Virus record (IMG/VR): IMGVR_UViG_3300017917_000952
Span: 1-64,000 of that record
DNA: 64,000 nt
Strand: one strand, 5' to 3'
Part shown: positions 27,024-41,700 of the stretch, piece by piece
Numbering within the stretch: the stretch's first letter is position 1
Layout of the letters: every line of letters starts with the position of its first letter
Position numbers and translations under genes: made by a program
Notes under the pieces: generated by a model
The model's input: only the letters and a program-made list of their open reading frames with translations
Database searches by the model: none
Told to the model about the DNA's origin: nothing

Positions 27024-27279
27024 AGAAGCCTGGGCTAAACTGCATACACGGCTGTCTCAAGACAACCATTCGAGTGTTATGCTAATTAGGACCAAGATGC
27101 GGGCAGTTTTGGGCTTTACTGTCAGACGCCATAGAGAGTGGCGTCACGATATGGGCGGTGTACAGCCCATAGATCTAATCCATTTGGATTTTTATAACGA
27201 GCCAAAACGTACAATGTTCATGCTCAAATATTCGGAATTTTTGGATAAATCTGGTAAAATTGATCTACGGGACAGTTGA
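26998..27279 (+). CDS. Hypothetical phage protein
   Basis: Start placed at ATG 26998 (MSKPIIL). Confidence 0.6.
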   Translation: MSKPIILSEEAWAKLHTRLSQDNHSSVMLIRTKMRAVLGFTVRRHREWRHDMGGVQPIDLIHLDFYNEPKRTMFMLKYSEFLDKSGKIDLRDS

Positions 27280-30864: not shown

Positions 30865-31302
30865 ATGAAAATTGGACTTAGTTACAGTCGATGTATTAGA
30901 GACATCGTCGAAGGCAAAGTAGACATTCAGGATGTCCTTGTGATTATTGCTCGAACGGATTTCGATCCGCGAGACAATGAACAATGGGAAAGTATTTGGC
31001 GTGGCTACGGTGGCGGCAATGGCGGGAGAGGTAGCATTTGGAGCCGTCCGGAATGGGCAGACTACGAAGCAGAAGATGAGGACCGTTTCCGCAGTGTCAG
31101 TATCGAACTTTGGGAAAGCGGTAAACTGCATCAGCCTCGACAGTTCGGATCAAATCCAGGTCGCTTGCCCTACTACTGGTTAGAAGCAAGTTTGCCCGCC
31201 GAAGAACTCGAATCAAACCCTGCTGTAAAAAAGGCTTGGGAACAATTTCAGATTGTTGCAGGTCTGAGCAAATCTACAAAAATTTTAAAGGATGATTTCT
31301 AA
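30865..31302 (+). CDS. Hypothetical phage protein
   Basis: [17 protein letters not shown]; AAGG RBS. Confidence 0.7.
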
Positions 31303-31303
31303 T

Positions 31304-31888
31304 ATGTTAGTACCAATGGTTATTGAAAAGACTGGTCAAGGCGAGCGAGCATTTGACATTTACAGTCGACTGCTCAACGAGCGTATTGTGTTCCTTAACG
31401 GACCAGTTGACGATACCAGTTCAAATTTAATCGTAGCACAGATGCTACATCTCGAAAGCCAAGATAGCGAAAAGGACATTAACTTTTATATCAATAGCCC
31501 CGGCGGTGTTATTACTAGCGGAATGGCCATCTACGATGTAATGCAATTTGTTAAACCGGATGTTGCTACTTACGTTCTCGGTCAGGCTTGTTCTATGGGG
31601 TCATTTCTAGCACAGGCAGGCACCCCGGGTAAACGCTTTATGCTACCACATGCCCGCCATATGATTCATCAACCTAGCGGTGGTGCTCGTGGTATGCAGA
31701 GCGATATCGAGATCCAATACAAGGAAATCACGCAAATGAAAACCATGCTGACTAAGTTGTATGTCGAGCATAACACGGCAGGAAAAACGTATGCCGACTT
31801 TGAAAAGGACATGGATCGAGATACTTTTATGAGTGCAGACGAAGCACTTACATACGGTCTCTGTGATCGAATCGTAACAAAGCGATAA
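31304..31888 (+). CDS. clpP: ATP-dependent Clp protease proteolytic subunit
   Basis: [26 protein letters not shown] (catalytic Ser), MIHQP (His), DRDTFM. Confidence 0.96.
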
Positions 31889-31899
31889 ACTACTGACTA

Positions 31900-31945
31900 A
31901 AATCTCCCATCGAGCAGTGTAAATATTACTGCTTATGGGAGATTT
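31900..31945 (+). promoter_or_regulatory. Stem-loop with a late-promoter-like GTAAATA in the loop and the RBS in the 3' arm
   Basis: AAATCTCCCAT..AGCAGT-GTAAATATT-ACTGCT.ATGGGAGATTT, ATG at 31949. Confidence 0.7.
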
Positions 31946-31948
31946 ATT

Positions 31949-32167
31949 ATGGCACTAATTAGAATAATACTTTTATCATCTTTATTTTTTACAACACTAC
32001 TGTGGCTGATGTTTCTAGGTAAACTTGCTCTGGACAATTTTAGAAAAGAACGAGAACTTCTTGTTTCTCTAAACAAAGAAATGGTGGGGCTAAGATCGGA
32101 ACTTAATCTTTTTAAGGAAGATATTGATGATCTTAAGAAAAAAATAGTTGACAAGTCAGACAGTTAA
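31949..32167 (+). CDS. Small membrane-anchored coiled-coil protein
   Basis: N-terminal hydrophobic helix plus heptad tail; GGAG RBS. Confidence 0.65.
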   Translation: MALIRIILLSSLFFTTLLWLMFLGKLALDNFRKERELLVSLNKEMVGLRSELNLFKEDIDDLKKKIVDKSDS

Positions 32168-32177
32168 ATACTATACT
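32148..32177 (+). promoter_or_regulatory. Sigma70-like promoter for queD, with an internal TTAAATA
   Basis: TTGACA-18-TATACT. Confidence 0.55.
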
Positions 32178-32258
32178 TTGTTAGTGGACTGCGACATTCA
32201 CCCCACTTTAAATACTCTGCGTGTCATCAAACTTGCTACTTTTTAAAGGAGACTAGAG

Positions 32259-38418: not shown

Positions 38419-38643
38419 ATGCCCAACAGCATCCAATCTACAGATGTACTCATCGACGAGTACGAAGAAACAAACGAAGACGCCACAGAAGATTTTACCT
38501 TTGTTCTACATTCAGACGGTAGTTTAAAATCATTTTCTGTACCACAACATCTAATGGATGAGATTCCCGAAGAAGTTCAACTAATACTAGGGCTTTTTGG
38601 AATAGAAGATATACACCAACTTAACGATAGAACTATCCATTGA
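38419..38643 (+). CDS. Hypothetical acidic protein
   Basis: GGAG RBS, 74 aa. Confidence 0.65.
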   Translation: MPNSIQSTDVLIDEYEETNEDATEDFTFVLHSDGSLKSFSVPQHLMDEIPEEVQLILGLFGIEDIHQLNDRTIH

Positions 38644-38694
38644 CTTCAGTAAAACCACTTTTTGGTAAATACACTACAAAGTGGTTTATTGAGG
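38644..38694 (+). promoter_or_regulatory. Stem-loop with GTAAATA in the loop and the GAGG RBS in the 3' arm, upstream of the giant fibre gene
   Basis: AAACCACTTT (38652-61) pairs with AAAGTGGTTT (38678-87); the stem extends as CTTCAG/TTGAGG. Confidence 0.65.
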
Positions 38695-38701
38695 AAAATC
38701 A

Positions 38702-41700
38702 ATGTCTTTACAACTAATTAATTTAGGAGAAGGTGCGAACAGCGGCACCGGGGATAGCATCCTAACTGCGTTTCAAAAGGTAAACGATAACTTCGTTCAA
38801 ATTTACGGAACCGTAAATCCTTCGGAACTAAACTATGATGCCCTGGCTTCTATAATTTTAAACAACACATCGAGCTTTGTCTCACTGTTTTCTAGTCTCG
38901 GAATTACCGCAGATAATGTAAATTACGATTCCTTATTAGATCTACTTGAACTAAATTCCTCTACATTCGCAACATTTTTATCCGGGTTAGGCATTACCGG
39001 CACAACAATTTCTACTGCAACCTCTTTGAGTTCTGGACAATTAACACAGGTCCAGGGATTAATTGCAACTAGCACAGGTAGTATTGCCTTAAGATTTAAC
39101 CAGTTAGAAACCACATTTAACAATTCGTTAACCAACCTCAATAATGCAATTAATACCAAGGCTAGCATAAGCGACGTTAGCATTGCGATCAGTAACAGTA
39201 CAGCAAGTCTAGCCACACGAATCAGTGGACTACAAACCAACTTTACTCAACTACAAGGTTCATTAACTAACTTAACATCTGTTGTTAACACTAAGGCCAG
39301 CATCACTGATGTTCAGACCGCTGTAAGCAATAGCACAGCAAGTTTGGCAACAAGAATTAGTGGCCTACAAACTAACTTTACTCAATTACAAGGCTCGTTA
39401 ACTAACCTAACCTCTGTAATTAACAGTAAGGCCAGTATCACTGATGTGCAGACCGCTATCAGTAATGCAACCGCTAGTATTGCAATTAGAGTCAGTGGAC
39501 TCGAAACAAATTATACCAACGTCAACAATAGTTTAACCAACGTCGGTAACTGGATTAATATTGGTAGCAATGCTGCTATCGTAAATCTACAAAGTGCTAT
39601 CAGTAATAGCACAGCAAGTATTGCCACACAGATCAGTGGATTACAAACTAATTTTACACAAATACAAGGCTCATTAACTGGATTAACTTCAGTTATCAAC
39701 AGCAAAGCCAGCATTTCGGACGTACAAACTGCTATCAGTAATGCGACCGCAAGTATCGCAACTCGTGTTACAGGTCTTGAAACTAATTTCAGTGCTGTCA
39801 ACAACAGTTTAACCAATGTCGGCGTATGGGCCAACTTGACCAGCAACGCTGCGATTACCAATTTACAAACTGCAATTAGCAATAGCACAGCAAGTATTGC
39901 CACTCAGATCAGTGGGCTACAGACTAATTTCAATGCAGTCAGTAACAGCCTAACAAACGCAGGAACCTGGATTAATCTAACCAGCAACGCTGCGATTACC
40001 AATTTACAAAGTGCTATCAGTAATAGCACAGCAAGTATCGCCACACAGGTTAGTGGACTACAGACAAACTTCACCCAACTCGAAGGATCGTTAACTGGCC
40101 TAACATCTGTTGTTAACAGCAAGGCCAACATTACAGATGTTCAAACTGCTATCAGTAATGCGACTGCAAGTATCGCAACTCGAGTTAGCGGACTAGAAAC
40201 AAACTATACAAACGTATCTAACAGTCTAACTAATGCAGGCAGTTGGATCGATATCGGTAGCAACGCTGCTATCACCAATTTACAAAATTCTATTAGTAGT
40301 AGTACAGGTAGTTTTGCCACACAGATTAGTGGATTACAGACCAACTTCACCCAGCTCGAAGGGTCTCTAACAGGATTAACCTCTGTCGTTAACAGCAAGG
40401 CTAACATTACAGATGTTCAAACTGCTATCAGCAACGCAACCGCAAGTATTGCAACTAGGGTATCTGGTCTAGAGACCAATTACACCAGTGTTGATAACAG
40501 TCTAACTAATGCAGGAAATTGGATTAACTTAACTAGCAATGCTGCAATTACCAATTTACAAAATTCTATTAGTAGTAGTACAGGTAGTTTTGCTACACAG
40601 ATTAGTGGATTACAGACTAACTTTACTCAGTTAGAAGGATCTCTAACAGGATTAACTTCTGTTGTCAGTACTAAGGCCAGCATAACAGATGTTCAAACTG
40701 CTATCAGCAATAGCACAGCAAGTTTGGCGTCAAGGACATCTAGCCTAGAGACTAACTTTACAAATGTTAATAACAGTTTGACCAACGTCGGCGATTGGGC
40801 TAATATCAGTACCAACGCTGCAATTACAAACCTACAAACTGCAATCAGCAATAGTACTGGTAGTTTGGCAACACAGGTAAGCGGCCTACAGACCCAATAT
40901 AATGACCTGGCTAATTCTGTTACTACGTTCTCGACTTACACTCAAGAAGTTATCAGCATCAGCAACAGTTTTACCAGTGTTCTAACCAGTATCAACAATC
41001 TGCAGACTGCGTTTAATACGTTATCGACCGGTACAGGTGCAACTGTAGAATATGTTGACACCGCAATTAGTAATAGCACAGGTAGTTTTGCTAGTACGCT
41101 GAATACTCTTCAGACTAACTTTAATACCGTACAGAACACACTGACTAATATTAACAATAGTCTAACAAACATTGGCAATTGGTCGAATCTTGCTAACAAT
41201 TCTGCAATTACAGGTATTAACAACAGTTTGACCAATGTTGGCACATGGGCAGATATTCAAAACAACCTTGCTATTTTAGGCATTAACAACAGTTTAACCA
41301 ATGTCGGTAACTGGGTCAATTTAAGTAGCAATGCTGCGATTACAAACCTACAAACTGCAATCAGCAACAGTACTGGTAGTTTAGCCAGCAGTGTTAACGC
41401 TTTACAGACAAGTTTCAGTTCACAACAGAGCACAATTAATGACCTAAACAATACATTAACCAATGTTAATAACAGTCTAACTAATTTGAATAATAGTTTG
41501 ACTAATGTAGCAACATGGGTCAATTTAAGTAGCAATGCTGCGATCACAAACCTACAAACTGCAATCAGCAACAGCACCGCAAGTATCGCATCAACTGTTA
41601 ACACACTACAGACAAACTATACCAGCCAACAGACTACTATTAATGCAATTAATAACACCCTGACAAACGTTAATAACAGTCTAACTAATTTGAATAATAG

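What the first reader, a model, noticed from the sequence alone, without database searches (positions are those of the whole stretch)
31900..31948. RBS-occluding hairpin with a late promoter in its loop (small membrane gene)
Seen: an 11-bp outer stem and a 6-bp inner stem enclose GTAAATA (31919-25), and the 3' arm contains the GGAG RBS of the 31949 gene. Known: T4 silences genes such as e, soc and I-TevI on early read-through RNA with this architecture. Late transcripts lack the 5' arm and are translated. Inference: this 72-aa membrane protein is harmful if made early (a lysis regulator or exclusion factor), even though it sits among early genes.
Basis: partly seen in the sequence, partly recalled or inferred. 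Interest (0 to 1): 0.6.

Follow-up and report, generated by a model that had tools for sequence, protein, structure and literature searches.

The report
Late-promoter hairpin gating a small membrane gene
A strong, evolutionarily conserved RNA hairpin in an uncultured jumbo phage hides the ribosome-binding site of a small membrane-protein gene and carries a T4-type late-promoter box in its loop. This is the known phage T4 way of restricting translation to late infection, found here in a distant phage lineage.

Summary
An 11-bp outer stem (31900-31910 / 31935-31945) and an 8-bp inner stem enclose TAAATAT. The fold is -26.5 kcal/mol, z = -6.3. GGGAG (31937-31941) lies in the 3' arm, 7 nt before the ATG at 31949.

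The genome is a 206.8-kb fragment of a Rak2-like jumbo myovirus. It encodes a gp55-type late sigma factor. TAAATA behaves as its late-promoter box: it is the rarest permutation of its composition, and 25 of 110 copies sit 4-9 nt before a gene's ATG.

In 23 of 23 distinct related contigs that carry a small membrane ORF after ClpP, TAAATA lies within 45 nt upstream of that ORF. In most of them it sits in a hairpin loop whose 3' arm holds the Shine-Dalgarno sequence, and the arms covary. The hairpin is 96-100% identical in relatives where synonymous sites are near saturation. No U-tract is conserved, so it is not a classic terminator.

The best explanation is T4 e/soc/I-TevI-style temporal gating of translation. 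No transcript ends could be examined. The protein's function is open, and "toxic if made early" is untested. This is a new member of a known kind.

The parts
31292..31888 (+). ClpP-like protease gene. It is the last gene of a tightly packed + strand run that starts after a 12/12 sigma70-like promoter at 27276. Its transcript would read into the hairpin.
   Evidence: Pfam CLP_protease 2e-77. Promoter at 27276 and no + strand terminator-like site up to 31900.
31900..31945 (+). RNA hairpin. Outer stem 31900-31910 / 31935-31945 (11 bp), bulge C31911, inner stem 31912-31919 / 31927-31934 (8 bp including 2 G.U), loop 31920-31926.
   Evidence: -26.5 kcal/mol, z -6.3. Covariation in relatives. 45-47 of 47 nt identical in close relatives where dS is about 0.9-1.0.
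31920..31925 (+). TAAATA, the predicted gp55-type late-promoter box, in the hairpin loop. By the T4 rule the predicted late start is near G31931, inside the inner 3' arm.
   Evidence: Genome-wide behaviour of TAAATA. Present in 23 of 23 relatives chosen without reference to the motif. T4 box lies about one helical turn upstream of the start (PMC2988020). Start site not mapped.
31937..31941 (+). Shine-Dalgarno GGGAG of the 72-aa gene, fully paired within the outer 3' arm, 7 nt before the ATG.
   Evidence: Predicted unpaired probability of the initiation region in relatives is 0.29 (read-through RNA) versus 0.52 (late-start RNA). RNA starting at 31931 is essentially unstructured.
31949..32167 (+). 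72-aa gene: hydrophobic N-terminal helix (about residues 4-24), basic residues after it, then a charged C-terminal amphipathic or coiled-coil helix. Function unknown.
   Evidence: dN/dS about 0.11. Homologues 66-82% identical. Divergent 54-115-aa family in relatives. No Pfam or PHROG match. Only weak atlas leads: PspB-like, BhlA/UviB holin-like.
32148..32177 (+). Sigma70-like promoter TTGACA-18-TATACT (11/12). It overlaps the 3' end of the small gene and precedes the QueD leader. It marks the surrounding genes as probably transcribed by host RNA polymerase.
   Evidence: TTGACA-N17-TAnnnT is conserved at the same place in several relatives.
38638..38704 (+). Second example in the same window. 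This hairpin has TAAATA (38666-38671) in its apical part. Its 3' side pairs the GAGG Shine-Dalgarno sequence (38691-38694) and the AUG (38702-38704) of a 2009-aa tail-like gene.
   Evidence: (-26 kcal/mol, z -5.5). phrog_2589 tail protein on the C-terminus.

Best explanation
The hairpin is a temporal translation gate of the T4 e/soc/I-TevI type. Transcripts that start upstream, probably at the sigma70-like promoter at 27276, read through ClpP and contain both arms. They fold into the -26.5 kcal/mol hairpin, which buries GGGAG, so the 72-aa gene is not translated from them. Late in infection, host RNA polymerase carrying the phage's gp55-like sigma recognises TAAATA (31920-31925) in the DNA and starts near 31931. 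That RNA lacks the whole 5' arm, is unstructured, and exposes a Shine-Dalgarno sequence 7 nt before the AUG, so the small membrane protein is made late only. Shown: the structure; its conservation and covariation; the strand asymmetry expected of an RNA; the invariance of TAAATA; the presence of a gp55 homologue; and the promoter-like genome-wide behaviour of TAAATA. Inferred: the start site, the timing of the upstream transcripts, and the actual block of translation. The protein is probably a late-acting inner-membrane factor. A holin-like or lysis-timing role is a weak guess.
For: Structure: z -6.3; top ~12 genome-wide. Late machinery: the gp55-like sigma at genome 122255-123172 matches phrog_12791 at 4.5e-85 and phrog_234 at 4e-26. 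The related phage CBB has a gp55-like sigma and a predicted ATAAATA late motif (PMC5259590). TAAATA as promoter box: it is the rarest of 15 same-composition hexamers (110 copies), and 25 of 110 are followed within 3-9 nt by an ATG opening an ORF of at least 45 aa, against 1-10% for the other permutations. These sites include the terminase and virion genes. 28 of 72 + strand copies lie in the ~3% of the genome left non-coding by my crude gene calls. Comparative: 23 of 23 distinct loci chosen only for a small membrane ORF after ClpP have TAAATA within 45 nt upstream. Cognate arms fold at -16.2 versus -10.3 kcal/mol for swapped arms, with 0 of 20,000 permutations as good. 15 of 19 pairs show compensatory double changes. 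G.U outnumbers A.C 54 to 22, and the + strand fold beats the - strand fold in 19 of 25 sequences, so the structure acts as sense RNA. Close relatives keep 45-47 of 47 hairpin bases while dS is 0.87-1.04, and their few changes fall in the bulge or preserve pairing. Initiation-region accessibility is 0.29 versus 0.52, rising in 20 of 22 sequences, p = 3e-6. RNA starting at 31931 is unstructured. Context: sigma70-like promoters dot 17-36 kb, and no start-proximal TAAATA site lies there. A second case sits at 38638-38704 before a tail-like gene. T4 precedent: PMC3014915 and PMC2988022.
Against: The box is a 6-mer, not T4's 8-mer TATAAATA. The relative CBB is reported to lack gp33 and gp45 homologues, so late initiation may differ from T4. 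Two relatives (L041, L047) have lost most of the stem yet keep the gene and the box. Some relatives without the small gene still have a short hairpin with ATAAATA in its loop right after ClpP, where there is no initiation region to hide. In the window's own sub-clade the stem is followed by a fairly U-rich tail, so a partial terminator role cannot be excluded.
Confidence: 0.7

Rival explanations
1. The hairpin is mainly a transcription terminator or 3'-end stabiliser for the ClpP operon. The TAAATA box and the Shine-Dalgarno overlap are secondary.
For: The hairpin starts 12 nt after the ClpP stop. In the window the GC-rich core is followed by AUUUAUUAU. Cultured relatives Atu_ph07 and Phosso have a true terminator after ClpP, followed by a TAAATA box.
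Against: The consensus scan did not call it a terminator. Across 23 relatives the 8 nt after the stem hold a median of 3 T, and only 2 reach 5. Real terminators in this genome have short GC stems, tetraloops and 5-7 U. What is conserved is the loop box and the Shine-Dalgarno sequence in the arm, not a U-tract.
Confidence: 0.12
2. The inverted repeat acts in DNA. Extruded as a cruciform or hairpin, it presents TAAATA single-stranded to the gp55-type holoenzyme and so strengthens the late promoter.
For: Several other TAAATA boxes in this genome are flanked by inverted repeats. Stems of at least 8 bp occur at 5.5% of TAAATA sites versus 0-3.4% for control hexamers. Relatives without the small gene keep a small hairpin with the box in its loop. 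The relative CBB is reported to lack gp33 and gp45.
Against: Stem positions favour G.U over A.C 54 to 22, and the sense strand folds better than the antisense in 19 of 25 sequences. That asymmetry is expected for RNA, not DNA. Most strong late boxes (terminase, virion genes) have no flanking repeat. The 3' arm consistently covers the Shine-Dalgarno sequence or the AUG, which a DNA role does not explain.
Confidence: 0.06
3. The hairpin is a processing site (for example an RNase III target of about 20 bp) or a protein operator that separates or regulates the ClpP and downstream messages.
For: In the window the stem has 19 pairs with one bulge, long enough for RNase III. The near-perfect nucleotide conservation in close relatives would also fit a protein-binding site.
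Against: Stem length is not conserved, ranging from about 8 to 23 enclosing pairs. The sequence is free to covary in wider relatives. No Rfam family matches.
Confidence: 0.05

Closest known systems
Phage T4 late-promoter / translation-initiation hairpins of genes e, soc, I-TevI, I-TevII, I-TevIII and segB (and mobE of phage Aeh1)
   Same: A gp55-type late box lies within or next to the 5' part of a stable hairpin whose 3' arm sequesters the Shine-Dalgarno sequence. The gene is embedded downstream of earlier transcription units. Late transcripts lack the 5' arm (PMC3014915, PMC2988022). Like the T4 endonuclease genes, the hairpin plus gene here behaves as an insertion/deletion cassette among relatives.
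   Different: The lineage is different: a Rak2-like uncultured jumbo phage (major capsid protein 68-72% identical to that group). The box is the 6-mer TAAATA and sits in the apical loop. The gated gene is a small membrane protein of unknown function. Nothing has been mapped experimentally.
Predicted ATAAATA late promoters of Rak2-like jumbo phages (CBB, GAP32)
   Same: The core motif is the same, it is associated with structural genes, and a gp55-like sigma is present (PMC5259590).
   Different: That paper does not describe boxes inside hairpins that hide initiation regions. It also does not describe the placement 4-7 nt before the ATG that implies leaderless late mRNAs here.
Rho-independent terminators
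   Same: A stable stem-loop lies immediately after a stop codon.
   Different: No conserved U-tract. The stem is long and bulged with a 7-nt loop. The loop sequence is conserved.
Small bitopic membrane proteins with a C-terminal coiled coil (BhlA/UviB holin-like peptides, PspB)
   Same: Size (54-72 aa), one N-terminal transmembrane helix and a charged helical C-terminus. These are the nearest language-model neighbours, at 0.77-0.88.
   Different: All scores are below the 0.9 reliability line. No Pfam or PHROG model matches. No endolysin lies next to the gene.

Membership tests
T4-type late-promoter/TIR-sequestering hairpin (e, soc, I-TevI class) | The phage encodes a gp55-type late sigma and uses a TATAAATA-like -10 box | tested here: met
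   gp55-like gene: phrog_12791 4.5e-85, phrog_234 4e-26. TAAATA is depleted overall, and 23% of copies sit 3-9 nt before an ATG opening an ORF of at least 45 aa. The box is a 6-mer, not the 8-mer.
T4-type late-promoter/TIR-sequestering hairpin (e, soc, I-TevI class) | A stable hairpin pairs the Shine-Dalgarno sequence and/or start codon in transcripts that start upstream | tested here: met
   -26.5 kcal/mol, z -6.3, GGGAG fully paired. Conserved with covariation. RNA-type strand asymmetry.
T4-type late-promoter/TIR-sequestering hairpin (e, soc, I-TevI class) | The late start lies downstream of the 5' arm, so late RNA cannot form the hairpin | not testable with these tools
   By the T4 spacing rule the start is predicted near 31931. 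RNA starting there is unstructured.
T4-type late-promoter/TIR-sequestering hairpin (e, soc, I-TevI class) | The gene lies on read-through transcripts from early or middle promoters | tested here: inconclusive
   A 12/12 sigma70-like promoter lies at 27276. There is no + strand terminator-like site before 31900, the genes are tightly packed, and no start-proximal late box lies between 16 and 47 kb. This is motif evidence only.
T4-type late-promoter/TIR-sequestering hairpin (e, soc, I-TevI class) | The protein is made only late | not testable with these tools
   No expression data.
Rho-independent terminator | A GC-rich stem is followed directly by a U-tract | tested here: not met
   Not called by the scan. 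Median 3 T in the 8 nt after the stem in 23 relatives. The window's own tail is moderately U-rich only if the basal A-U pairs are opened.
Holin (for the 72-aa protein) | Match to a holin family model, or a position next to an endolysin | tested here: not met
   No Pfam or PHROG match. The neighbours are ClpP and QueD. The general holin look (transmembrane helix plus charged C-terminus) is present, but it is not specific.
Known RNA families (Rfam 15) | Score at or above a family's gathering threshold | tested here: not met
   Only generic hairpin matches at 16-20 bits against thresholds of 50-90. No match in the whole window or in 12 relatives.

The most novel reading that the evidence does not exclude
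The hairpin and the small gene may form a self-contained 'late-expression cassette' that moves between genomes of this phage clade. The inverted repeat may also work at the DNA level. Extruded, it would present the TAAATA box single-stranded to a gp55-type polymerase in phages reported to lack the T4 co-activators gp33 and gp45. That would be a structure-dependent late promoter, comparable in logic to the phage N4 hairpin promoters (my own knowledge, not checked here).
Probability: 0.07. Interest if true: 0.7.

Novelty: new member of a known kind. Interest (0 to 1): 0.42.

Why it matters
The T4 trick of placing a late promoter inside a hairpin that hides a ribosome-binding site appears to be used, and kept by selection, in a very distant branch of the T4 superfamily: uncultured Rak2-like jumbo phages. 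This gives 20-odd natural variants with compensatory changes that could serve as a ready-made mutational series.

It also supports TAAATA as the late-promoter box of these phages. It marks a fast-evolving family of small membrane proteins as late-expressed, which makes them reasonable candidates for lysis-timing or membrane functions in phages whose lysis genes are poorly known.

The side observation may be of wider interest than the hairpin itself. Most late boxes sit 4-7 nt before the ATG, implying leaderless late mRNAs.

Tried and rejected
- Megablast of the locus against the phage collection found no match.
- tblastn of the 72-aa protein against phages, and a pattern scan of viral contigs, found nothing. 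Relatives were reached through ClpP instead and through the word search.
- RNAalifold on a MAFFT alignment gave no structure because the stems are out of register. I replaced it with an arm-swap test and a covariance-model alignment. That alignment is fitted to the model, so it leans towards the structure.
- The covariance model found only one copy in this genome, so the hairpin is not a dispersed repeat.
- Rfam gave nothing, including for the QueD leader.
- From the sequence I suspected an FtsB/DivIC-like or LapA-like protein. There was no DivIC hit, and LapA_dom scored only E = 0.49 in one relative. Idea dropped.
- The atlas search gave only sub-threshold leads.
- I did not run the large representative protein search, structure prediction or complex prediction. 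No claim here rests on them.
- The TAAATA copies at 32165 and 32209 were considered as further late promoters. They more likely belong to the sigma70-like promoter and the conserved QueD leader.

Full report
**1. The observation**

- The outer stem is a perfect 11-bp helix, 31900-31910 with 31935-31945.
- C31911 is a single bulge.
- The inner stem is 31912-31919 with 31927-31934.
- The loop is TAAATAT (31920-31926).
- GGGAG (31937-31941) lies wholly in the 3' arm, 7 nt before the ATG at 31949. That ATG opens a 72-aa ORF.

As RNA the region folds at -26.5 kcal/mol, against -10.3 +/- 2.6 for dinucleotide shuffles (z = -6.3, none of 200 as good). It is about the twelfth most stable 60-nt + strand window in the whole 206.7-kb record. 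The hairpin starts 12 nt after the stop codon of a ClpP-like gene (31292-31888; Pfam 2e-77).

**2. The genome**

- The window is the first 64 kb of an IMG/VR virus record of 206,751 bp, estimated 58% complete.
- Megablast finds no close relative among isolated phages.
- The major capsid protein is 68-72% identical to those of Rak2-like jumbo myoviruses: 121Q, PBECO4, Vibrio phage 2.275.O and Sinorhizobium phage Phosso.
- The terminase, tail sheath, family-B DNA polymerase and DnaB-like helicase are recognisable.
- At 122255-123172 the genome encodes a gp55-type late sigma factor (phrog_12791 4.5e-85; phrog_234 4e-26). It lies next to an SbcD/gp47-like gene and has its own sigma70-like promoter.
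- For the related phage CBB, a gp55-like sigma and a predicted late motif ATAAATA before structural genes have been published. The same paper reports that gp33 and gp45 homologues were not found (PMC5259590).

**3. TAAATA behaves as the late-promoter box**

- The full T4 octamer TATAAATA is rare here: 7 copies on the + strand and 3 on the - strand.
- TAAATA is the rarest of the 15 hexamers of its composition, with 110 copies on both strands against 137-396 for the others.
- 25 of the 110 copies (23%) are followed within 3-9 nt by an ATG that opens an ORF of at least 45 aa. The figure is 1-10% for the other permutations.
- These sites precede the terminase large subunit (box at 173980), a virion protein (175570) and many genes of the structural region.
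- 28 of the 72 + strand copies lie in the roughly 3% of the genome that my crude gene calls leave non-coding.
- The commonest spacings between box and ATG are 5 and 7 nt. T4 late boxes lie about one helical turn upstream of the start (PMC2988020). These spacings therefore predict mRNAs that begin at, or 1-2 nt before, the AUG.
- The base before the box is A, G or C. GTAAATA, as in the finding, also precedes the terminase gene.

**4. Comparative evidence**

Sampling. ClpP brought in 80 related viral contigs, 65-94% identical in protein. I then selected loci only by the presence of a small membrane ORF (45-125 aa) starting within 140 nt after the ClpP stop. All 23 distinct loci have TAAATA within 45 nt upstream of that ORF.

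Architecture. In most of these loci the box sits in a hairpin loop. The 3' arm carries the Shine-Dalgarno sequence (GGGAG, GGAG or AAGGA), and the ATG follows 18-24 nt after the box. In one relative (L059) the ATG itself lies in the 3' arm, 7 nt after the box. That is a leaderless version of the same design.

Covariation.
- The arms change together. Examples are CTCCCAT/ATGGGAG, CTTCCAT/ATGGAAG, ATCAACCATT/AATGGTTGAT and a completely different 17-bp stem in L048.
- In an alignment-free test, each 5' half joined to its own 3' half folds at a mean of -16.2 kcal/mol, against -10.3 for swapped halves. None of 20,000 permutations did as well.
- In a covariance-model alignment, 15 of 19 pairs show at least one compensatory double change. 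80% of cells are canonical pairs, against 69 +/- 1.3% after shuffling partners. This alignment is fitted to the structure and so leans towards it.

RNA rather than DNA. G.U pairs outnumber A.C 54 to 22. The sense strand folds better than the antisense in 19 of 25 sequences (p = 5e-4). So the structure is selected in the sense RNA, not as a symmetrical DNA element.

Strength of constraint.
- Three closer relatives encode the same 72-aa protein at 66-82% identity.
- For L090 and L092, synonymous divergence in that gene is 0.87-1.04 and dN/dS is about 0.11.
- The hairpin is 45-47 of 47 bases identical in those two, and one change away in L095 by the alignment.
- The few changes are in the bulge or keep pairing: G-C to G.U, and G.U to A-U.
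- The hairpin is therefore far more constrained than synonymous sites, and the ORF is a real gene.

**5. Predicted consequence**

With the late start placed six nucleotides after the box, at G31931, the RNA has no stable structure. Its minimum free energy is -3.6 kcal/mol, the centroid is unpaired and z = 0.16.

Across 22 sequences (the window and 21 relatives), the mean unpaired probability of the initiation region is 0.29 in read-through RNA and 0.52 in late-start RNA. It rises in 20 of 22 (Wilcoxon p = 3e-6).

**6. Context**

- No start-proximal TAAATA site lies between about 16 and 47 kb.
- That stretch is dotted with sigma70-like promoters placed before genes: 17982, 20120, 21969, 27276 (12/12), 32148 (11/12) and 35941.
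- From 27276 to the hairpin the genes are tightly packed, and no + strand terminator-like site is found. Read-through of a host-polymerase transcript into the hairpin is plausible but not shown.
- The hairpin plus small gene is missing in several relatives. In those, ClpP is followed directly by the QueD leader. The unit therefore behaves as an insertion/deletion cassette, as the T4 endonuclease genes regulated this way do (PMC2988022).

**7. Not a one-off in this genome**

- At 38638-38704 a second hairpin (-26 kcal/mol, z = -5.5) holds TAAATA in its apical part. It pairs both the GAGG Shine-Dalgarno sequence and the AUG of a 2009-aa gene with a tail-protein-like C-terminus.
- At 196365 a 9-bp stem puts AAGGGAG in the 3' arm.
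- At positions 87, 139885, 194180 and 198496 (- strand), short stems around the box cover the AUG of leaderless-type genes.
- Stems of at least 8 bp enclose 5.5% of TAAATA sites, against 0-3.4% for control hexamers. The design is recurrent but not general.

**8. Rival explanations**

Terminator. A classic terminator is unlikely to be the conserved function. The scan does not call one. The 8 nt after the stem hold a median of 3 T in 23 sequences (the window and relatives). This genome's evident terminators look different, with short GC stems, tetraloops and U runs. In the window's own sub-clade the tail is moderately U-rich, so some attenuation cannot be excluded. The cultured relatives Atu_ph07 and Phosso have a separate true terminator after ClpP, followed by a TAAATA box. 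In Phosso the box lies at the edge of a 10-bp hairpin that abuts the Shine-Dalgarno sequence.

DNA-level element. A cruciform role is disfavoured by the strand asymmetry.

Processing site. An RNase III-type site is disfavoured by the variable stem length.

Known RNA families. No Rfam family matches.

**9. The protein**

- It has a hydrophobic helix at about residues 4-24, basic residues just after it, and a charged amphipathic C-terminal helix.
- Relatives are either 54-62 aa with the same plan, or 99-115 aa with extra hydrophobic helices. All end in the same E..E.K..K.DI..LK-like helix.
- No Pfam or PHROG family matches.
- The language-model neighbours (PspB-like, BhlA/UviB holin-like) score below the reliability line.
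- A late membrane role such as a holin-like or lysis-timing function is a reasonable guess only.
T4 soc is harmless, and removing the I-TevI hairpin did not reduce viability.

**10. Verdict**

- The functional inference about the protein is open.
- The case is a new member of a known kind, in a lineage where it had not been described, with unusually rich natural covariation.
- What is missing is any transcript mapping.

Noticed in passing
whole genome G000; in the window e.g. 87, 7960, 47527, 55014 (+) and 9581, 15351, 62345 (-): 25 TAAATA boxes lie 4-9 nt (mostly 5 or 7) before the ATG of an ORF of at least 45 aa, often with no Shine-Dalgarno sequence and directly after a terminator. Examples are the terminase, a virion protein and sheath-region genes. 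By the T4 spacing rule this predicts leaderless or near-leaderless late mRNAs. I did not find this described for Rak2-like phages.
   Followed up: partly
window 38638-38704: A second strong hairpin (-26 kcal/mol, z -5.5) has TAAATA (38666-38671) in its apical part. Its 3' side pairs the GAGG Shine-Dalgarno sequence and the AUG of a 2009-aa tail-like gene.
   Followed up: partly
window 32178-32258: The leader of the PTPS/QueD-like gene holds a hairpin (AGTGG...CCACT) and a conserved tail (TTTAAATACTCTGC...). In relatives the stem covaries (GCGG/CCGC, CCGG/CCGG). The region is 90-93% identical where flanking genes are 70-88%. It looks like a cis-regulatory or riboswitch-like leader for the phage queuosine-precursor genes, but no Rfam family, preQ1 included, matches.
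   Followed up: partly
window 32148-32177: A near-consensus sigma70-type promoter (TTGACA-18-TATACT) overlaps the last codons of the 72-aa gene. TTGACA-N17-TAnnnT is kept at the same place in several relatives.
   Followed up: partly
related loci L014-L017, L019, L021, L022, L060 (just after the ClpP stop): These relatives lack the hairpin plus small gene. Instead they have a short 5-6-bp hairpin (GCCTA...TAGGC) with ATAAATA or TAAATA in its loop, directly before the QueD leader. The small gene with its hairpin thus behaves as an insertion/deletion cassette.
   Followed up: no
L059:3105-3164 and L059:3142-3444: In this relative the ORF's ATG lies inside the 3' arm, 7 nt after the box, with no Shine-Dalgarno sequence. 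It is a leaderless version of the same gate, and the ORF is a 101-aa form with extra hydrophobic helices.
   Followed up: no
L097 (Sinorhizobium phage Phosso) about 1843-1880; L096 (Agrobacterium phage Atu_ph07) about 1830-1945: Both cultured jumbo phages have a true terminator after ClpP, then a TAAATA box before the next gene. In Phosso the box sits at the edge of a perfect 10-bp hairpin that abuts the GAGG Shine-Dalgarno sequence. Phosso could serve as an experimental model.
   Followed up: no
genome 163817/163823 and 194174/194180 (loci L006, L008): These are back-to-back TAAATA boxes on opposite strands within palindromic sequence, each 5-7 nt before a divergent gene's ATG. They appear to be compact divergent late promoters.
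   Followed up: no
genome 64908-67178 (L002:908-3178) and window 31292-31888: The phage carries both a ClpP-like protease and a 756-aa Clp/AAA+ ATPase (phrog_4871, 5e-248). It also has a separate T4 gp21-like prohead protease at 136085-136717. ClpP is therefore an auxiliary protease, not the head-maturation enzyme it is labelled as in one RefSeq relative.
   Followed up: no
L095:790-820: In this relative one extra T puts the ATG inside the 3' arm (equivalent to window 31935) in frame with the main ORF, so the gene caller adds 5 residues (MGDFI). In the window that ATG opens only a 7-codon out-of-frame ORF.
   Followed up: no
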